Shown here: in pieces, positions 31,316 through 61,715 of the stretch
Layout of the letters: each line of letters starts with the position of its first letter
Position numbering within the stretch: the first letter of the stretch is position 1
From: Aplysia californica
Taxonomy: Eukaryota
Length of the DNA: 64,000 nucleotides
Assembly: GCF_000002075.1 (NCBI RefSeq)
Contig: NW_004797322.1
Span: 102,386-166,385 of the forward strand
Direction: 5' to 3'
Position numbers and translations under genes: made by a program
The notes under the pieces: model-generated
Seen by the model: the letters and a program-made list of their open reading frames with translations, nothing else
What the model was told of the DNA's origin: nothing
Databases searched by the model: none

Positions 31316-33660
31316 CCAAGATCTTTTGCTGAAGATGAGAATCTCGTTGCAATAGAAGATATTTTGCCCGATGAGTCCCATGACCCTGAATCGACATCTA
31401 CATTTGATGAGACATCAAATGAAATTATTATCAATCTGAAGAAAAAACTGTGTGCGGAAAGAGCCAAGAACTGGCGTCTGAAGAAAAAAATGAAAAAACC
31501 TACTTGTGCTGAAAAAACAAAAAAGGCCGACACAACCTTCACTGAGGACATGAGTACTTTAAGTGCTTTGCTAGATAAATATCTGCCCAAACATGCTCAG
31601 AACTTTGTCCTGTCCCAAGTATGTATGAGCAAGCTTGGTAAGAATGCTCGTAGGTGGAAATACCATGAAAAGAGTTTTGCTCTGTCAATATACCATGCAA
31701 GCAGAAAAGCCTACCGCCTCCTACAGCAAGTCTTTCACCTGCCCAGTCCTAAGACTTTAACTAAGTCGGTGAAAAATGTGAACATCCACCCAGGAATAAG
31801 TGAAAACATGCTAAAACTATTTAAGATCAAAGTAGACGCAATGTCTGAGCAGGAGAAGGTTTGCGCTATCATGTTTGATGAAATGTCTATTCAGCAAAGT
31901 GCGGTGTATGATCCTTCGGGGGATTTGGTGGAAGGTTTTGAGGATTTCGGAGTCCTTGGAAGATCTCAGCATCAGGCAAACCACGCCCTTGTCTTTATGA
32001 TTCGTGGCTTAACCATGAAGTGGAAACAGCCTATCTCTTATGCCTTATCAAAAGGACTCACTAAACACAAAATGTTAACTACTTTGACTGTAGATGTCAT
32101 TAAAAAAGTGTTAGAAATTGGGCTGATCCCAAAAGTGTTAGTATGTGACCAGGACACAAACAATCGTGCCGTATTTCATCAACTTCGGGTGACGACAAAA
32201 GAGCCGTATTTCATCTTGATAGGTCACAAAATTTTCTGTTTGTATGATGACCCTCCTCATTTAATATAATAATAATAATAATAGATAGCATTTGTATAGC
32301 GCATATCCCCGCTCAACAGCAGGCTCTATGCGCTTTACACTATATTATTACCCCAGCAGACCATAGAACACTCCGAAACATTCTCAGCTTCCCGGGAAGC
32401 ATACAGTGCGAGCAGCCGATTAAGCGCTCAAACACTAACAAACTGACAAGATCTTTCGCTGTCTATAGCCGGGTACCCATTCCCACCTGGGTGAAGTGAG
32501 GAAAATTCGTGTAAAGTGCCTTTCCCAAGGACACAACGTCGGGCCCTTGACGGGATTCGAACCCACGACCTTACGGTTGCGAGTCCGAGAGCCTAACCAC
32601 TAGGCCACCGAGTGTACGCAACAACATGAAGAGGACAGGCTTTGAGGTTGGTGGAGAAGATGTCTCCTGGAAATACATTGAAGAATTTTATTCAATGGAT
32701 TCGAAGCAGAGTGTCAGAATGGCACCGAAACTTACCAACCGCCACATTCGGTTGCCTGCCTTTGCTCACCTCAGCGTCTCGCTTGCGACACAAGTACTAA
32801 GCCACACAGTCGCTGCAGGAATTAACTCCATGATGCCCATGGGAGCGCTACCACAAGAAGCCAGACACACAGTCAGTTTTATTAAGCAGTTTGACAAGCT
32901 ATTTAACTGTTTCAACAGCAGGTCTCTTTCGAGCAGTGGTCCGCTGAGACATGCTATCACACCTGGCTCACAACATGTCAAGTTCCTTGAGCAGATAGCA
33001 CTCTGGTTGGAGACAGTAAAATAAAAAAATAAAACTGGCACACTACCATGTATCGAAGGCTGGAAACTCTCTGTAAATTGTTTGTTACAGCTGTGGGAAG
33101 AGCTCAAAGCAGTACACAACTTCCATCATCTAGTCACCAGTAGACTAAACCAAGACTGTTTGGAGAATTTGTTTTCCATCATTAGAGGAAAAGGAGGACA
33201 CCGGTTCAACCCGGATGCTAAGAATTTCAGGAGCAGCCTCAGGCAAGTGATGGTGAACTCAGTCATGGTTGCAGGAGAGCGGAAAAATTGCAAAGACGAC
33301 CTGGATGCATTTTTGTTCAACATTGAACATATCACCAGCAAAGGAGCTCCCAGCACTGTGAGGACTAGGTTACAACAAGATGTGCCCAAGCAACTCCAGC
33401 AAGCCATGATAACAACCCCAGAAACTGTTTTCACGCAATCTGAAGAGAACATATTGGCATACATTGGTGGCTATGTATCCTCCAAACTTCGGCCCATCCT
33501 CTGCGAGAGCTGTGTGAATCTTGTTTCCTCAAACAAAGATGCTTCCAATGTGACCACACCTTTCTGCTAGAGAAAAATTTTGACTATGCCAAAGTTGGTT
33601 TACAAGCACCATCTCCAGCTCTTCAGCATCTTCTCTCCACTATGGAAGACTCTCTTCTTC
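31316..33660 (+). pseudogene. P-element (THAP9-like) transposase, 5'-truncated and interrupted by a SINE
   Basis: AYRLLQQVFHLPS, IMFDEMSI, ANHALVFMIRGL..KWKQP, VCDQ, DPPHLI/SVRNN, APKLT, VSLATQVLSHTVA, FDKLFNCFNS, RLNQDCLENLFSIIR..GG...NP, YIGGY. Internal stop near 33022. Confidence 0.92.
32266..32610 (-). mobile_element. tRNA-derived CORE-type SINE with L2-like tail
   Basis: On - strand: GGTGGCCTAGTGGTTAGG (A box), GGTTCGAATCCC (B box), TGTGTCCTTGGGAAAGGCACTT..CCAGGTG..AATGGGTACC (CORE-like), GTAAAGCGC...GCGCTATACAAATGC(TAT)n. Confidence 0.88.
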
Positions 33661-33860: not shown

Positions 33861-36059
33861 ACAAGCCTATGCTACATTGGTGCAGGATAAGTTTAATAAC
33901 TTTTTAAATGTCCTTTGGCAATACTAAGGTGCAATGAATTTGAAAGCACAAGTTTTGGATGATTTTGCTTGCTTGTTTGTTTATATTAAGTTGGTTTATT
34001 TGTCTCATGTCCCTTTTTCGGATGCCATATCAGCCATCTTAACAATTCAATCGCCCTCAATTTTTATCTTCCTTCCAAGTAAGAATCAAGCAAGAATTTG
34101 TCTTCAACCCTTCAACAAGATCAGGTGACTACTCTTTTGAAGGCGGAGACCTACAGCAACCCCCCCCCCCCCCCACAAGTCATTTTATAGGAGTTTCTTT
34201 GAATACTCTGCTGAAATGGTGAAGGAAATGGACAAAGAAGTGGCCATTGTGGCAATATCAGAAATTCATTCCACAAAGGTTAAATATTCATCGGAACCCT
34301 CACAATAATTTCCCTATCCTTCCCTCTTTTTCTGTCTTTTTTCTGTGTTGTGTGGACAGGTCTGTCAAGGTAAAAATCTACACATTCATAATAATGCAGG
34401 GAGATACGATAAAGAGAATACGTCAAAATCATCTCCCGATATTTCAAAAACGAAAACAATAGAAAACTTTAGCGTGGACACATGTGTTTGTACATCAACA
34501 TACCTTTCACGTTTTTATTTCATGTTTTACAAGTGCTCAATGTGGCCACCACCGACAGCACGGACAACATCAAGCTGATGAGAGTTCCTCCTGATCACGC
34601 AACAGGATGTCTGGTATGGGATGGGACGCCTCAATCTAGTGGTTTGTTTTTCGATTGTTGGTCCAACTGAAGACAACAGGAGATTAACAGGCAATAAAAT
34701 GGTGCAACTGGTCACAATACGCTACACGAGATTTGAAGAGGGAGGGAGAGCCAGTGTTGGGCACACTACACTACAAAACAATACCCCCCATGTGCAGGGC
34801 TAAAGAGGGGTGGGGGTGTGTCTTCCTCTCTCTCTCTCCACTGTCTGTAAATCTGGAAAAGCAAAAAGAGAGTTTTTAGAAATGGAGGTGCAGTAAAGCA
34901 TTCGGAAAGAGCATTGTACAAAAAGGAAAGCATTAAAATAACAACGTACTTTAGCTACCAAGGGGCGATATATTCTTCTCACTTGTCATGGTCAAAGTTT
35001 ATTGAAAACCTATGTTGTAAAGTAGCAAGGCTCACTTCCAGAGCAAGGTGGTCAGGTAAAAGATTATGAGCACTTGGACTTTGTACGGTTGTGAAGTACG
35101 AGGTATGAAGAAATATATGACAAAACAGAGCAGGTGCACTTAAAATTCTGGATTTTGTTTGAGTGAACCCCAAAAATGGCTTTTCATTCAATATCAAAGG
35201 AGATGGGAAAATGGCAGAACCATAAAAACGTTCAAAATGTTGTAACTTCGAATTTTATAATCTCGGTATCAAATTAATCCGAAAAACAAGCTCTCGCAAA
35301 GTAAATCATTTTCACAGTTCTAAGCATTGGGTGAAACTTTGGGTTTTGGGGTGTCTACATTGATGTAGTTGAGAGCCTGGGCGACGAGGAAATTCAGCTT
35401 CCCGTCAAACCCTGTCATTTCTCACCATCTAAAATTGTTGGACGGGAAAAAGGAAAAGGACGTCATAACCAAGTGTGACTCAACAAAAAACAAGAATAGC
35501 AGCCAGGGGAGAAAGAGATCTCCTCACGTGTGCCCTGCTCGCCTACATGGTAACAGTTTTGCTATTTATACCACAGGTATTCTAGTCCCTGCGGAATATA
35601 AGGAAACTGTGCTACAGTTTATTGAACTTTACCGAATGCTAGCCGTCTTGTGGAAAGTGAAATAAAAAGAGTATAGTATAGTAACAAGTAAAGAAGAGAG
35701 CTCGCATACTCAGCATATTGCGCCCTAAACCTTATGGTTGAAACTGGCAAAAAACTCTTTGTAGTACCTTACCTGTACAAAGAGAATGTCTTTTATATAT
35801 TAAATATATATATATGGGTTTCTCTTTCTCTACGTTTAAGTGTATGGGTGCGATCCACCCATGTTGTCAGGAATCAGATAAAATCATTTTTTCCTATATG
35901 TGGACTATACGGGTGTGATCCACCCATGTTGTCAGGAATGTGATGGGAAATATGTTGTCAGGGATAGGGTTAAGAAACTCCAAGACCAAGTTTTTAAGGA
36001 ACCATCACTTCCTTTTCATTTCCATCATGGCTGGCTTGAGGGCAGGTAAGATTGTGTTC

Positions 36060-37338
36060 TTGTCATCGGTTTTTATACTTGAAGCAAGCAACCCCATCGG
36101 CTTAATATGAAGCGAGTGACCCTTCAGATCTCTTGACATCTGTGTGTGCTGTGACATTTATCGATTGAAGTGGTTATATTTTACATATATTATATCTAGA
36201 AATTTCAATTGTCTCCACTGTTGGGTCCAGCCATCACATGATCTCACATTGTTTTCCAAGATGTCCATCATGACAATAACGAAGGTTCTTGTCATTGGTA
36301 TCGAGCAACCCTAGATTATTCTAAAATATCTCATAATTACTTGTTTCTAAACCCATGTGAACCTATATATATTCAATTATTATTTCATGTGGTGAATTCC
36401 AATTGGTGCCATAGTAATAGTCACGATGTTCAGAGGTTAAGGATCACTGCCATTGTTGGGGTTGCTTGCTGTTTATTTCTACAATCTAGGGTATGACAAT
36501 ACTGAAGGTTCTTGTCAGTGGTAGCTAGCGACCCTAAATCGGATAAAACGTCTCATAATATTGGTTATAAAGTGATGTGGATGTGATACTCATCTTTTTT
36601 TTGGATTTGATGAATTCCAATTGGATCTGTAATAATTTTCAAGTTGTTCAGGATTAAGGATCAGTGAACTTAGGGGTTGCTTGCTCTTTATTTTCTTAGA
36701 TAAAAATTATGACAACAATGGAGATTATTGTCAGTGGTAGCCAGCAACCCTAGATGAGATAGAATATTTCATATTAGAGGTTCTAAAGTGATATGGACTG
36801 TTAACATAACATTTGTTTAAAGTAATTAATTTAAATTTGTGCCGTCATAATTGTTTTTGTTGCTCTGAATGCAGGATCACTGAAATGTAGGGGTTGCTTG
36901 CTCATTGTTTTCTTAGGTAAAATTATGACAACAATGGAGATTATTGTCAGTTGTAGCCAGCAACCCTAGATGAGATAGAATTCCCGTATTATTGGTTCTG
37001 AAGTGGTGTGGACCTTAAATTTAATGTTTATGACATATAATGAATTCAAATCAGTGCCATAGTAATATCTCTGTCGTACAGGATTAAGGGTCACTAGATA
37101 GCAGGGGTCACTTGTTTATAATTTTCTTATGACAAGAACTCTCTTGTCATTAGTAGCTGGTAACCCTAGGTGAGATGGAATGTCTCATATAAACTATTTG
37201 GGCCTTATTAATTCAATTAGGACTTCAATATAGTGAATCCCCATGGGTGCCACAGTAATATTCTTGTAGTGTAGGATTTGGGATCATGTAAGAATGGGGT
37301 TGCTTGCTTCGCTTTTATGAAATCTGGTTCGATGACAA
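36060..37338. repeat. Intronic tandem array of ~203-223-bp units with hairpin-forming junctions, closed by inverted repeats
   Basis: ATGACAA recurs at 36270, 36493, 36709, 36925, 37129 and 37332. Each unit has TTGTCA, GCAACCCTA, TGAATTCC, GGATCACTG and GGGGTTGCTTGC variants. Perfect 17-bp IR at 36081-36097 / 37294-37310. Confidence 0.9.
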
Positions 37339-40300
37339 CGTATAACTTCATCATTCAACATTAGTGACAATGTATTTTCTAAGTGACATAAATTGTCATA
37401 AACTTTCTAATTTGTACTTTTATTTTTTAATTTTCACCCTGTATGATTTTAAAATGGGACACAAAATGAAGCAGTGTTGTCCTTAAAACAGGAATTGGAA
37501 ACTGATTATTATAGACTGCTTGTGGATACAACCATAGGGGAGGACATTGAAGTTATACAGTGTGATCCACAAAACAGCCCAGTCAAACTAAACTACCTTT
37601 TGGTTTAGCTTGCCTCATGATGTCCATACTTGATGTGTTAGTTGTCAAATTTGTCAGATATTTGGTTTCTTTTTACACCTTTACGATAATGACAGCAAGT
37701 TGTCTGAACTTCATTTTGATAGATTTAAAACTCTTAAATAGCATCAACTAAGCACACTGCCCTATCCTCTTTATTTCAGGGCTGAGGCCTCCAAAAGAGA
37801 AGGTAGTCCTACCACCCAAGCCTAAACAGTCAAGAAGCAATGCCGAAAAATGCCAAGCCTTTCGTGAACGGCTGAAGCAGGATGAAGTCAGGTGTAAAAT
37901 TGCCAAGGAGAAGAAGGAGGACAATCTCCTTTATCGTCTCAGCCGAACCCCTGAGCAGAAAGACCTGTTGAGAGAAAAGGCCAGACTCCGCCAGCAGAGG
38001 CGAAGGTAAGAGCTGTCCGTTTCAAATTGTCTTTAGAATTTAAAACCTTAAGCTTTAATGCCCACATTCACATGGTTTCTACTTTTCAAAAAGTGCTTTT
38101 AGTTTAATGTTGTGTGTTCCTTTCCTTGCTAGAGTTCCAAGTTTGATTCCGCCGGGGGATCATTTGTATTTTTCCTGCACAGCCATGCAGATGGGACGGT
38201 CTTTGGTGTGGTTGACATTTTTATACAGTATTTCATTGGGATCCCCAAATTATAGTCAAGCCTCATTATACCACCAGCCCTGCTTACCGCCATGTTTTGC
38301 CAATGTACGAAAAGGAACGCCTCTATAGTATTTGGGCCTTTATACTGCCGTCCGCCAACTGTGAGTTGTACTGTAAGTAATAAATAAATGTAAATTTGCC
38401 CCGTTGTACAACCAGCAATTTGGCTGTCAGAAGAACACTACACATGACGCATGACACCCACACAGCAGCTGCTTGATAATCTCTTTCAAATACACATCTC
38501 TGCAAGATCTGCCTATTTTAAGCATCAATTGACTCCTGATGAATTTATTTTATTCTGAATACAAATTTATTTTGCAATTGTCTTCTAATCTACTTCATGA
38601 AACTGAAACGATCTTAATGTCGATAGTGCTAGAAAAGGGATTCCAGTAACCCTTTTCAAATGCTTTTAGGATCGCAGTTCCCAGTGCGGCATGTGTATGG
38701 AACCCCTAAACAAAAAGCCAAATTATTAGACAAAAGCTGTAAGAATCCTGTGCTCTCATTTAATTAATTACTACCTCTCATTATAATCTGTGGTGTGAGA
38801 GAAGCCAAAATCCTGGTGGATTTATCACATTATTGTGTAGTTGATTAATTTTTTTTTTTTAATGTTAATGTCACAGGGCAGAACTAAAGAAGATCCGAGC
38901 TGAGAGCAATGGCCAACTCCCTCAGACTACCCCTGGGAAAAAGAAAGAGGAACCAAAGAGTCCATTCGTGACTAGGAAACAGGCTCAGTTGGCGGCTGCC
39001 AAAAAAGAGAAAAACCGACTTAGTCAGCAGGTGAGATCCTGTTTTTTTAAATTTTAAAAGCTATTATAAAATTGTGAATTTGCTTGTATTGGTTTTAAAA
39101 TCTCAATTTAAAAAAAAGAATTTCAACAGTTTTGTTTGGGGAATTTGATATAGTGCCAAGTTTGACCTAGTCTTTTGTTTAGATTGATTTTTATTTAATT
39201 TATATCTTTTTTTTTTTTTAGGAATATAGTAGGGAAAGTTCTCAATGAAAGATTTTCAGTGTTTGTACAGCAGAAATCTAAATATAACAGGGATTGTAGA
39301 ACCAGAGTAAAATCCCTGTTTTATCTGGTCCCCCAAGGCAACAGTCAGGAAGAGAAAAACAAGCGGGAATTTGAAAAATCATTGTTATAATTCAACAAGA
39401 TCCGTATAAAATTAGGTAGAGTCTGTCACAAGTGGTTTCAGCTCTATAAACTAGGTAGCGTAAACTCGGTGGCGGGGAGCGGTGCGGCGCTGGCCGGGTG
39501 GGCGCTGTTTTTTTGCCATTATAACGGCAGATCATGTTTGAAGCAATAAAATACTATTTGCAATGATCTCACAGTCTTGAAAAAAATTAGGCTCTATGTT
39601 ATAGGGGTTGTATTCTTTTAATGTGATGTTTGGTGCCCTTGGTACTTTTTTATTACCTGTCAAACATCGGGTTGAAGCCAGTTAGCGACTTAAGCAAATA
39701 TGATTATATTAAAAACAGCTGCCATTTTCTTAAAAATTGACTGAGAGGTTAAAGAATGGTATGGAAATTCTCAGATATAGGCCTTTCATATGGTACACAT
39801 AAATTTGTCATACAGCTACTTTGAAAATTTAGTTTCTGGTCTATATAAACATTTTATGAGAAAAAAAACAATTTCTTGAGAATTTTTACCCCTGGTGGTA
39901 AGCACAAGTTTGAAATAAAGCTCTTTGTACTCCTTTTTTTGGGGGGTGTAAAATAGAAAAGACGTGCCAACATGAGTGCACAGAAGAAGAGGAGGGAGCT
40001 GGAGAAACAGAGGGACCGGTACCGGAGGCAGCAAGAGAGGCGACAGGCAGAGGCACCACAGCCACGTAGCAAAAGAGCTGGGGGCATTGTTCGGGCGCTG
40101 TTTTCCCTTAAGGAAAAAATTTAATTTTCAAGAAATAAGTTTTCCCTCTGGAAGTCTGATTTCTTGAAAAAACTACTGAAACAGAGGGATGTAAGTATGG
40201 TGAAGGACTTAAGTTCTTATTATAATAGGGGCACTGCATGTTCTTTTGGGGTTCCCCATTTTTTGGAAAGAAATGCCATTGATTTTCCTGGCAAGAAAGG

Positions 40301-41682
40301 GTCAGTAGACCAAAAAAAGGTCCTGACCAAATCAATGGTAGTTCTTTTCAAAGAATTAAAAAAAACCCACCCCAATGTAAAGATATCCTTCGCTACTTTT
40401 AAGCGAAGAAGACCCCAAAGTATTTCTCTGTCTTCCAGCAGGAAGTTTCTTCAATGTCTCTGCGAAAGATGCACAAATGTCATGCTCCTTATGGAGGTAT
40501 TAAATAAAGAAATATCAAATAGAATTACCTCCATTGAGGCTCTTGTGGAGCAGACTCTCTGCCAGAATGTGGAGAGAATGTGTATTGAGCGACAATGCCC
40601 GAACTGTGGGGTTAATTCTCTTATACAGTCCATAAAAGGTAACATAGAGGATCTCACTGTCGTTCGAAAATGGTCGAAGTGGGAGAAGAGTGAAAAGGCC
40701 TCAAAAGACCTAGTCTTTCACGAGAGCCCCCTCAGTGAGATCCTCTCATTACTAGAGAAAAGTGTTCATGAGATTGCCAAGCACTTAAAAGTCGCAGAGT
40801 GGCAGAGAAAGCAATACCAATCTCTTAAATTCTCTTTGCCCCGGGGTCATGCTATGTGCACTGTGGACTTTGCTGAAAATTACTTGTGTAAATTTCAGAA
40901 CGAAGTCCAGAGTGCACATTGGTCTTACAGGCAGGTTTCTGTACATCCATGTGTTTTTTTTTAATAAATGTAATGAGGCAGACTGTCACAAAATTATCAC
41001 AGAGTATATAGTGTTTTTGTCTGATGAGCTCAGACATGACTCTCATTTAACTAAACATATTCTTCGTCGTTGCATTGAGAGGATGAAAGAAAAGGGTATT
41101 GTTGCCCTTCACTTTTTCAGTGACGGCTGTAGCAGCCAGTATAAAAGTAGGTACACCTTTCTGCATCTGTCTCAGCTGCAGGAAGAATACCAAAATATGA
41201 CAATCACCCGTCATTTTTTTGGGTCCAACCACGGAAAGAGTCTGTGTGACTCATGTGGTGGGGTGGTTAAGAATGCCGCCACAAGGGCAGTACTTTCTGG
41301 ATCTCATATTATCCAGAGTGCTGAACAGATGTTCAACTTTTGTAACGAGCACCTCAGCATTGCTCAAGACAGTACTTGTTGTCATTTGGAGAGTGTACGG
41401 TCTTTTGATCTTATCAATCCAAGTAACATAGAACGTGTGGAAACTGGTTCACTTCAGCCAGTTAAGGGAACTCAAACTATTCACAGTTTGCGTTTTCCGT
41501 CCACAGGGTCCTTAGAGACCAAGCTATTATCATGCTTTTGTGAAGTCTGCCCCATTGGGGAAAGGGGTGTGTGTGTAAATGAACCTTTTACGGGAGAGTG
41601 GTGTCAGCAAAAGATTGTGCGTGTGCGTAAACAAAAGAAAAAGAAATCTGTCAGTCAAGCCGTTTTGCCTGTTGTCCCTGTC

Positions 41683-41871
41683 GTCCCTGTTCAGTGTGAC
41701 ATTGTCCCTGTTCAGCGTGACATTGTCCCTGTTCAGTGTGACATTGTCCCTGTTCAGTGTGACATTGTCCCTGTTCAGCGTGACATTGTCCCTGTTCAGC
41801 GTGACATTGTCCCTGTTCAGCGTGACATTGTCCCTGTTCAGCGTGACATTGTCCCTGTTCAGCGTGACATT
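41683..41871 (+). repeat. 9 x 21-bp coding minisatellite (VPVQ[C/R]DI)
   Basis: GTCCCTGTTCAG(T/C)GTGACATT repeated nine times in frame. Confidence 0.97.
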
Positions 41872-43129
41872 GGTGTAGCTGACTCATCATCAAGGGGTGT
41901 TTATTTTGCCTCTTTGCGGGCCAAATTAACCAAGTGCAACACATTTGAGCAGTTGCAGTCTGTCTGTAGGTCAGCTTCAGCAGAGATGTCTCTGTACCCA
42001 ATGCCAGTAGTGGCACCAAAACGAGTTATAGATGTCGGCATTGTGGATGCAATTGCTTTGAGTCTTGTCCCCGACTACTTGAAGCCTTTACACCCTGTTC
42101 TCACCATAGCCGATGGGAACTGTGTTCCAAGAGCTTTTAGCCTCTTAGCCTTTGGTGACCAGGATCACCACAAAGAACTTAGGTGTAGGATAGTCATGGA
42201 GCTTGCCTTGAACTCTTTTGATTACTTGTGTCTGAGTTCCTCAGATTTGAATTTGTTACATGTTCTCTCTGATCACCACTGTGGTGATATCAAAGAAACC
42301 TTTGAAAGAGAGACTGTACACATTGCCCGAAACTCTGTGTACATGGGCATGTGGCAGATTATGGCAGCTTCCAATGTTCTGGGAGTGAATGTTTTTTCAG
42401 CCTTTCCTCAGAAGAGTATGAAAGTTTACCAGTCTTTTTTCTCCCGTAGACTAGTACCTCGGGGCACAGCAGTTGATACTACCATTGCTATTTTGTGGTC
42501 TGCAACAAAAGAGCACAATGAATTAATGTCTGATGAGCACTGGACAGCAAAACCATGTGGTCCCTCTTATGGGGTTGACAAGGTTTGTTGACGTAGACTC
42601 TGACCTTTGTTAAAATCTATCAAAGATCATCATGTACGGCAGAAATAGCCCTTGAAGTATTTTCATCATATCTTGGAGACCACAAAAGAGCATCGTTGTA
42701 TAAGTGGGAAATTTTTAGAACATTTTTACTCCGTATTTCACTGTTTTAACAGTTGGTTTTTATATTCTCTTCTCGTCTCTTCCTGTTTCCTTAAATTTAA
42801 ATTTGACAGGGGTTTTGTTGTGGCCCCCACATTCCCTGTTGTATCAGGTTTCAGCTGTTGCTTTAATTTGCAACGTATACCCTTTAGGCCTATGAGCCAT
42901 TAAATGCTTGGCAATCTCGTGTTGTGTTAATGATTTATAAGTTGTACACTGAGACAAAACCGTACTAAATGAGAAAGGTGCACCATTATGAAAGTGGAAC
43001 GAACTCAGTTGCCTGAAAAGGGTAGTTTGAGCATGTGTGGCCTAAATAAGCTAAACCCCCCTCCCTTACCTCATTTAGGCCATATGTGGCCTAAATAAGC
43101 ACTCCCTATATATATATATATATATGTAC

Positions 43130-60900: not shown

Positions 60901-61715
60901 TATTATTTCAACCATATTCCACTTTCTTTGACAGGGAACTCCTGCAGGAGTTCATTAGAAAGGACCTCCCCCAGCCAACCCAGGGAAACACCTTTGTGCG
61001 CCACCTCCACACCTTCTTTTGGCAGCACCGCCAGTACTGCCATCTGAAGGACACCCTTCAGGCAGACGAAGCAATCATGGTGATGGACTTTGCCGAAAAT
61101 AGGAATGCCTCATATACCGTTGAGGTGAAGAGTGCACATTTCGGCAAGTCTCAGATCACCATGCATCCCATCGTCTGCTTCTACCGAAGTGGTGAAGGAC
61201 TAGAGAGGCACAGCATGGTTTTCATGTCAGACGAAATTTGTCATGATTACCATGCTGTGCACCATTTCACTGTGATGTCCTTGGAGGCTTTGGCCAAGGC
61301 AGTACCCACTGTACAAAAAATGTACATTTTCAGTGATGGCTGTGCTGGCCAGTACAAAGGAAAGGGCACCTTTGCTGACCTTAGCCTGTACACTGGTAAG
61401 AAAATATTTTCATCGGTTGTGCAGTGTTATCCTGCTCTCTGTCTTTTTTATGTTGTTGGCTTTTTTTTTCTTCAATATAAAATTATGCCCTTTTTGTTAA
61501 TAAGTACCCACATCTCGTATACACATGACTTATGGTGTACTCTGTGCCCCTAATTCATTACAACATTGAGATATTTCAGGTACAGTTCTACTGTTTTCCC
61601 TTCTCAGGTCAAAAGATACAGCGCGTTTTCTTTGGGTCAGAGCATGGCATGGGAAAGGGGAGGCTGACGGTGAGACTGGGGTCATCAACCAGGCTGTGGA
61701 CCGGGCGGTCATCTC
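57970..61715 (+). pseudogene. Intron-rich Sola2-type transposase, 3'-truncated
   Basis: Charged N-terminus; Pro-rich repeats 58660-59050; VGFTKFTTLHPK, CARMYCLN, DFAENR..VKSAHF..QITMHP, SDEICHD, FSDGCAGQYK, FFGSEHGKGEADG. About six GT-AG introns (e.g. 61396-61607). Confidence 0.82.

What the first reader, a model, noticed from the sequence alone, without database searches (positions are those of the whole stretch)
36270..37338. Array of ~215-nt units with repeated multi-stem hairpins inside intron 1 of the transposase
Seen: six ATGACAA anchors at periods of 223, 216, 216, 204 and 203 bp. The unit middles have diverged strongly, but each junction keeps two nested stems: outer TAGGGGTTGCT(T)GCT / AGC(C)AGCAACCCTA and inner ATGACAA / TTGTCA. 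Junctions 3 and 4 also have a small side hairpin (TTTATTT..AGATAAA in junction 3), giving a three-way-junction layout. Variation is partly structure-preserving: junction 2 has GTTGC/GCGAC (G-U), junction 5 has GTCAC/GTAAC (a G-C to A-U swap plus one mismatch), and its inner stem extends to ATGACAAGA/TCTTGTCAT. Inference: a conserved-structure, variable-spacer array co-transcribed with the transposase. It could be a polycistronic small or structured RNA cassette, or an array of inverted transposase-binding sites or cruciforms.
Basis: partly seen in the sequence, partly recalled or inferred. Interest (0 to 1): 0.85.

Follow-up and report, generated by a model that had tools for sequence, protein, structure and literature searches.

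The report
Nucleosome-spaced binding-site lattice in transposons
The apparent hairpin RNA array is more likely a DNA-level ruler: a family of animal cut-and-paste transposons lines its ends and first intron with short inverted motifs set one nucleosome apart and in helical register, which suggests that the element encodes its own chromatin layout.

Summary
The array is real (36060-37338; anchor periods 223/216/216/204/203 exact), but the RNA-cassette reading is not supported: no Rfam hit, no junction-specific covariation (permutation p>=0.47 in six elements), G-U 22 versus A-C 15 (p=0.32), and units arose by tandem duplication (63% alignable). Eleven related Sola2/vertnin-like elements carry the same bipartite RTGAC-based motif, some in intron 1, some upstream of the ATG, most near the right terminal inverted repeat, in both orientations. 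Geometry is conserved while spacer sequence is not. Spacers are 137-140 bp (21/26) with cross-element identity equal to shuffled. Junction gaps come in 10-bp steps (1-2/11-12/21-22/31). The last motif lies 153-156 bp from the right TIR core (7/8 elements). Spacers carry a 10.4-bp WW/SS periodicity in nucleosome phase (z=-3.8; 9/9 elements; held-out p=0.002). Best model: protein-binding sites, probably for the transposase, in the linkers of positioned nucleosomes. Geometry is shown; nucleosome occupancy and the binder are inferred. No RNA data were available. The window copy is decayed (no TIRs, frameshifts). Five literature searches found no description; the scan had noted this only on this same stretch.

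The parts
36027..36045 (+). Transposase exon 1 (19 nt, ATG); in relatives it sits inside a 141-144-bp interval between two motifs
   Evidence: same 19-nt exon in L056, L057, L058; interval sizes
36060..36094 (-). Lone reverse motif D0 just after the 5' splice site; complementary to the last forward motif
   Evidence: (I7); conserved position in L054, L056, L057, L058, L067
36095..36276 (.). Most diverged unit: spacer plus decayed forward motif (only the inner site at 36270-36276 remains)
   Evidence: WW phase still present
36289..36311 (-). Reverse motif, 23 bp
36312..36458 (.). Spacer, 147 bp (one helical turn longer than the 138 class)
36459..36534 (.). Junction: forward motif 41 bp, 12-bp gap, reverse motif 23 bp
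36535..36673 (.). Spacer, 139 bp, WW in nucleosome phase (coefficient -6.8)
36674..36750 (.). Junction: forward motif 42 bp, 12-bp gap, reverse motif 23 bp
36751..36890 (.). Spacer, 140 bp, WW coefficient -10.2
36891..36966 (.). Junction: forward motif 41 bp, 12-bp gap, reverse motif 23 bp
36967..37104 (.). Spacer, 138 bp, WW coefficient -2.9
37105..37166 (.). Junction: forward motif 31 bp (one turn shorter), 8-bp gap (off-rule), reverse motif 23 bp
37167..37296 (.). Spacer, 130 bp (carries a deletion; off length and off phase)
37297..37338 (+). Last lone forward motif, about 440 nt before the 3' splice site
   Evidence: same layout in L056, L057, L058, L067
37780..38005 (+). Exon 2: basic, charged helices; 42-68% identical to exon 2 of relatives
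38877..39030 (+). Exon 3
39957..42591 (+). Exon 4: DDD-type RNase H transposase core, 21-bp coding tandem repeat, OTU-like domain; frame breaks near 40955 and 42550

Best explanation
The array is an expanded part of a DNA-level lattice built into Sola2/vertnin-like transposons. Each motif is a 12-14-bp outer site (consensus GTCAC-NN-GTGAC, drifting by family) plus an inner RTGAC site set 0, 1 or 2 helical turns away. Motifs are separated by about 140-150 bp of sequence-free but length-fixed DNA that carries nucleosome rotational signals. Most likely each spacer wraps one nucleosome with its dyad near the midpoint, and an element-encoded dimeric protein (the transposase) binds the phased sites at entry/exit and linker DNA. 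This would fix a nucleosome right up to each TIR and over exon 1, serving end recognition or synapsis and autorepression. Intron 1 is where the unit can be duplicated without disturbing coding sequence. The hairpins are a by-product of head-to-head sites. SHOWN: motif, its distribution, spacing, 10-bp quantisation, WW/SS phase. INFERRED: nucleosome occupancy, identity of the binder, function.
For: Motif at left end, intron 1 and right end across related elements. Array spacers 137-140 bp in 21/26; cross-element identity 0.503 versus shuffled 0.504. Right end layout: reverse motif, 147-150 bp, forward motif, 142-144 bp, reverse motif, then 153-156 bp to the TIR core in 7/8 elements plus L067. 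Left TIR core 370-373 bp before the first motif in 4/4; the offset from L054/L067 located the TIRs of L056 and L057 that BLAST had missed. Motif lengths cluster at 22-24, 30-33 and 40-42; junction gaps at 1-2, 11-12, 21-22 and 31 (period 9.9, p about 0.0015 on distinct values). WW best period 10.5, p=0.004; peaks at +/-5, 15, 26 from the midpoint with SS in antiphase, z=-3.8, 9/9 elements negative. The 142-144-bp interval is negative in 8/8 at 25-38% ungapped identity; the terminal interval is periodic, p=0.002. Held-out elements L062, L063, L067: WW-SS p=0.0023; L067 reproduces the spacings. Family-specific drift of the outer site suggests co-evolution with an element-encoded protein (inference; precedent from my own knowledge of CACTA and hAT subterminal sites).
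Against: No chromatin or binding data. WW phase is weak in the L067 intron spacers (-0.6, +8.6, -1.0, -7.3, -1.7) and absent across exon 1. Spacers are about 30% GC, which is not strongly nucleosome-favouring. 138 bp is shorter than 147, so the outer site overlaps the core edge. Units within one array are not independent, and motif borders were curated by hand. No recognised DNA-binding domain was found in the N-terminus. The conserved TGAC core could be a host-factor site. D0 and the last arm match best or tied-best in 3 of 5 arrays.
Confidence: 0.58

Rival explanations
1. Same nucleosome lattice, but the sites are bound by a host factor that recognises TGAC half-sites (TALE-homeodomain, bZIP or similar), recruited to set chromatin and expression of the element.
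For: The RTGAC core is constant across families while the transposases are only about 40-60% identical. TGACA and ATGAC are known host half-sites (own knowledge). No clear DNA-binding domain found in the transposase N-terminus.
Against: The outer site differs by family. Fixed distances to both TIRs point to the transposition machinery.
Confidence: 0.16
2. The 140-150-bp intervals are tight DNA loops or wraps around a transposase oligomer, not around histones; the WW periodicity reflects bending anisotropy.
For: Helical quantisation and WW/SS phasing fit any tightly bent DNA.
Against: Interval length matches the histone core in every orientation class, and unit periods of 193-226 bp match nucleosome repeat lengths.
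Confidence: 0.1
3. Structured intronic or UTR RNA: repeated hairpins processed into small RNAs, or a long-range D0-to-last-arm stem that loops out the array and tunes splicing.
For: Junctions fold with z about -3. D0 pairs 17-18 bp plus 9 bp with the last arm at probability 0.9-0.98 and sits 14 nt from the donor in several elements. The plus strand folds better in 5/6 introns.
Against: No covariation, no G-U bias, no Rfam match. Spacing is independent of orientation, loop lengths come in 10-bp steps, lone same-direction motifs have no partner, and motifs lie at fixed distance from the TIRs. A secondary RNA effect on splicing is not excluded.
Confidence: 0.11
4. Neutral satellite-like tandem expansion inside a transposon, like the 140-180-bp internal repeats of oyster Helentron elements.
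For: Units arose by tandem duplication and copy number varies from 0 to about 10; precedent in PMC7492417.
Against: Length is held at 137-140 bp after spacer sequence has decayed to near-random identity (L057 0.50, L061 0.49), and the same geometry holds at non-tandem terminal positions.
Confidence: 0.05

Closest known systems
Subterminal transposase-binding repeats (CACTA/En-Spm TnpA sites, hAT/Ac subterminal motifs, Sleeping Beauty IR/DR) - from own knowledge
   Same: Short motif repeated at both ends, in head-to-head and tail-to-tail orientation, family-specific, running into the 5' transcribed region.
   Different: Here sites are bipartite, quantised in helical turns, and separated by constant nucleosome-length spacers with WW/SS phasing; they extend as an expandable array in intron 1. 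I know of no such rule for those families, and searches found none.
Satellite-like internal arrays of mollusc Helentron/HINE elements (PMC7492417)
   Same: Short tandem arrays of roughly nucleosome-sized monomers carried inside a mobile element in molluscs.
   Different: Those are sequence-homogeneous repeats in non-autonomous rolling-circle elements; here geometry and a short motif are conserved across families whose spacers are unrelated, in autonomous DDD elements.
Dscam-type docking-site/selector competing RNA stems (PMC6071210 abstract)
   Same: One arm just after a splice donor is complementary to several downstream arms.
   Different: No alternative exons are evident in the units, no covariation, and the motif also occurs outside the intron.
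CRISPR-like or TIGR-like repeat-spacer guide arrays - from own knowledge
   Same: Conserved repeats with constant-length, variable spacers next to a nuclease-fold gene.
   Different: Spacers are paralogous duplicates (56-69% identity in the window), match nothing else in the genome, and the same intervals occur singly at the element ends.

Membership tests
Sola (Sola2-type) DNA transposon | DDD-type RNase H transposase | tested here: met
   Conserved D367, D452 and D494 (numbering of P0004) in alignment A1; strand/helix order of the model fits an RNase H core. Foldseek top hits covered only the OTU domain.
Sola (Sola2-type) DNA transposon | Terminal inverted repeats and 4-bp target-site duplication (feature from memory; the defining paper was not held) | tested here: inconclusive
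   Met in relatives (L058: 24-bp TIR with ATAT duplication; L054: ACAT duplication). Not found in the window copy, which is truncated.
Sola (Sola2-type) DNA transposon | Sequence placement in Sola2 rather than Sola1 or Sola3 | not testable with these tools
   No Repbase or Sola profile available; Pfam has no Sola domain (PMC5751038). Most relatives begin GAG, two begin GAC. Public names are 'vertnin'.
Known structured RNA (Rfam) | Match to a covariance model | tested here: not met
   No hit overlaps the array at E<=10.
Conserved RNA structure | Partner-specific covariation and G-U strand bias | tested here: not met
   Permutation p>=0.47 in register A and >=0.24 in register B; G-U 22 versus A-C 15, p=0.32.
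Conserved RNA structure | Discrete expressed RNA | not testable with these tools
CRISPR/TIGR-like guide array | Unrelated spacers acquired from targets | tested here: not met
   Spacers are mutually homologous and have no other genomic match.
Subterminal transposase-binding repeats | Motif at both element ends, linked to the family | tested here: met
   (in relatives; the window copy keeps only the intron part).
Subterminal transposase-binding repeats | Bound by the element's own protein | not testable with these tools
   Needs EMSA or ChIP.
Nucleosome-positioning DNA | About 147-bp interval with 10.4-bp WW/SS antiphase periodicity about a dyad | tested here: met
   weak in L067 intron spacers.
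Nucleosome-positioning DNA | Actual histone occupancy | not testable with these tools
   No MNase or chromatin data.
Independent satellite or MITE | Many copies outside the element | tested here: not met
   One full array and one 280-nt fragment in the genome.

The most novel reading that the evidence does not exclude
This transposon family is built to be recognised as chromatin: its transposase reads phased sites on both sides of self-positioned nucleosomes, assembles its end complex on a nucleosomal substrate that ends at the TIR, silences or licenses its own promoter nucleosome, and uses its fused OTU domain to remove ubiquitin from nearby chromatin proteins.
Probability: 0.25. Interest if true: 0.88.

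Novelty: new variant of a known kind. Interest (0 to 1): 0.72.

Why it matters
How cut-and-paste transposases find and pair their ends in chromatin is largely open; nucleosomes are usually treated as obstacles or target features. Here a family appears to conserve nucleosome-length spacing, helical phase and rotational signals across sequences that no longer align. That gives sharp tests (5-bp versus 10-bp insertions, MNase dyads at predicted positions) and a natural example of motif-plus-nucleosome grammar under selection. It also points to the likely DNA motif of the transposon relatives of vertnin, offers a reason for the fused OTU domain, and warns that inverted binding-site lattices can mimic conserved RNA hairpin arrays.

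Tried and rejected
Rfam: nothing over the array. H/ACA, C/D, hammerhead, SECIS and pre-miRNA readings: required boxes are not consistently present and loops are quantised. Covariation in both registers and G-U bias: negative. TIR search in the window: none; both flanks carry other repeats. A bZIP-like motif in exon 2 was only a recalled resemblance: Pfam gave nothing and the model shows plain charged helices. A distant Ptychodera relative (L068) lacks the motif. A loose genome-wide TIR-plus-motif pattern was uninformative. One PubMed id from memory was wrong and the Sola paper is not held. Spliced exons were not joined for any search; exon 2 was used alone. N stretches in L067 were left unfilled.

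Full report
Observation. The six anchors lie at 36271, 36494, 36710, 36926, 37130 and 37333, with periods 223, 216, 216, 204 and 203 as reported; TRF gives period 216. They lie in intron 1 (36046-37779) of a four-exon transposase gene. Four junctions have both nested stems; the first lacks its outer 5' arm and the last lacks its 3' arms. A lone reverse arm (D0, 36060-36097) follows the splice donor and matches the last arm at 17/17 nt. The middles align at 63-64% identity, so the units arose by tandem duplication. The genome holds only this array and one 280-nt fragment at 86% identity.

The element. The protein has a conserved DDD-type core and a C-terminal OTU-like domain (Pfam weak; Foldseek hits to OTU deubiquitinases for a full-length relative). 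Relatives have 20-24-bp TIRs and 4-bp target duplications (L058 ATAT, L054 ACAT), consistent with Sola as I recall it; the subgroup could not be tested. The window copy has lost both TIRs, has frame breaks near 40955 and 42550, and is flanked by unrelated repeats at 35793-35975 and 42922-43126.

Relatives change the picture. DNA around homologues shows arrays in intron 1 of L056, L057 (Elysia crispata), L061 and L067 (Elysia marginata), with different primary sequence but the same layout: a lone reverse motif after the donor, junctions of forward plus reverse motifs, and a lone forward motif 390-480 nt before exon 2. L058 (Babylonia) and L054 have few or no intron junctions. The same motif also lies upstream of the ATG and downstream of the stop codon, and L058 and L059 carry junction arrays at the right end. 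The motif is an outer 12-14-bp site (consensus GTCAC-NN-GTGAC, drifting by family) plus an inner RTGAC site.

Geometry. Between back-to-back motifs in arrays the free DNA is 137-140 bp in 21 of 26 cases, although spacers of different elements are no more alike than shuffled sequence (0.503 versus 0.504) and spacers within L057 or L061 average 0.5. At the right end the order is reverse motif, 147-150 bp, forward motif, 142-144 bp, reverse motif, then 153-156 bp to the TIR core in 7 of 8 elements (L054 is the exception at 116); L067 repeats this. Same-direction neighbours are 141-151 bp apart in most cases (164-165 after the doubled D0 motif), and exon 1 sits within one such interval. On the left, the TIR core is 370-373 bp before the first motif in four elements; the offset taken from L054 and L067 located the TIRs of L056 and L057. 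Motif lengths cluster at 22-24, 30-33 and 40-42 bp, and junction gaps at 1-2, 11-12, 21-22 and 31 bp (best period 9.9; p about 0.0015 counting distinct values per element). Spacing is therefore nucleosome-sized whatever the orientation, and variation comes in whole helical turns. Both properties belong to double-stranded DNA, not to RNA loops.

Nucleosome signal. In 19 spacers the best WW period in a 6-20 scan is 10.5 (p=0.004 against phase-randomised controls). WW peaks at about 5, 15 and 26 bp from the midpoint and SS is in antiphase, the pattern known for nucleosomal DNA (own knowledge): z=-3.8 over 36 intervals, negative mean in 9 of 9 elements. The 142-144-bp terminal interval is negative in 8 of 8 elements at only 25-38% ungapped identity; the interval before the TIR is also periodic (p=0.002). 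Held-out elements L062, L063 and L067 give p=0.0023 for WW minus SS, though WW alone is weak in the L067 intron. In the window, five of six spacers follow the phase; the deleted 130-bp one does not. Caveats: units within an array are not independent and motif borders were curated by hand.

RNA test. Rfam has no match. Arms are no more complementary to their own junction partner than to others (p>=0.47 in six elements), nor in the alternative register (p>=0.24). G-U and A-C mismatches are 22 and 15 (p=0.32). Junctions fold on both strands. One residual point favours RNA: D0 and the last arm pair strongly in the window and are best or tied-best partners in three of five arrays. That may be history, since these two arms are the pair left in array-less elements, or a secondary effect on splicing.

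Mechanism. Most likely each spacer positions a nucleosome and a dimeric protein binds the phased half-sites at its entry/exit DNA. The fixed distances to both TIRs and the family-specific drift of the outer site favour the transposase; the constant TGAC core leaves room for a host factor. Likely roles are end recognition or synapsis in chromatin and control of the promoter/exon 1 nucleosome. The intron array is an expandable extension of that lattice, with copy number from zero to about ten. Occupancy, binder and function are inferred. The N-terminal exons model as long charged helices with no recognised DNA-binding domain.

Comparison and novelty. It works like the subterminal binding-site arrays of CACTA, hAT and Sleeping Beauty elements (own knowledge) and resembles in unit size the satellite-like arrays inside oyster Helentrons (PMC7492417). 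It differs from both in conserving geometry rather than sequence. Literature searches found no description. The scan's earlier notes cover only this same stretch. A distant Ptychodera relative lacks the motif, so the demonstrated range is this mostly molluscan clade. Verdict: a real feature, not an RNA cassette, and a new variant of subterminal repeats with an apparently undescribed nucleosome-scale design; interest 0.72. Spliced exons were never joined for a search, and masked stretches were left as they are.

Noticed in passing
window 41683-41872: Nine copies of a 21-bp unit inside the transposase ORF, encoding a 7-residue repeat in the linker before the OTU domain; relatives P0024 and P0022 have other short repeats at the same place.
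   Followed up: no
window 35793-35975: Multi-copy repeat (about 180 bp, two 37-bp direct repeats 65 bp apart, ending in a TA run) inserted just upstream of the ATG; at least 10 near-identical copies elsewhere.
   Followed up: partly
window 42922-43126: Very high-copy repeat end followed by a TA run (837 first-look candidates), where the right end of the transposon should be.
   Followed up: partly
window 31364-33570: Broken P-element-type transposase; a 344-bp piece is 99% identical to DNA next to the only other array fragment (L002, contig C1173).
   Followed up: partly
window 18572-19843 (-): Uninterrupted 423-aa ORF with transglutaminase core and PAW domain (peptide:N-glycanase-like); possibly a retrocopy or a large exon.
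   Followed up: no
window 12-1343 (+): Vanin/biotinidase-family ORF.
   Followed up: no
window 11732-12748 (+): Tc1/mariner-type transposase ORF.
   Followed up: no
window about 61215-61388: Weak second match to the same transposase family (39% over 56 aa).
   Followed up: no
L068 14049-15060 and 6805-7190, 13497-13870: Ptychodera relative: diverged array of about 145-bp period containing the octamer ATGCAAAT downstream of the gene, and a different GTAAC/GTTAC-type motif at both sides of the gene at 163-349-bp spacing; possibly an analogous lattice.
   Followed up: no
L058 7456-15921: Complete element with TIRs and target duplication inside an intron of an ArfGAP gene in Babylonia; a good template for experiments.
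   Followed up: partly
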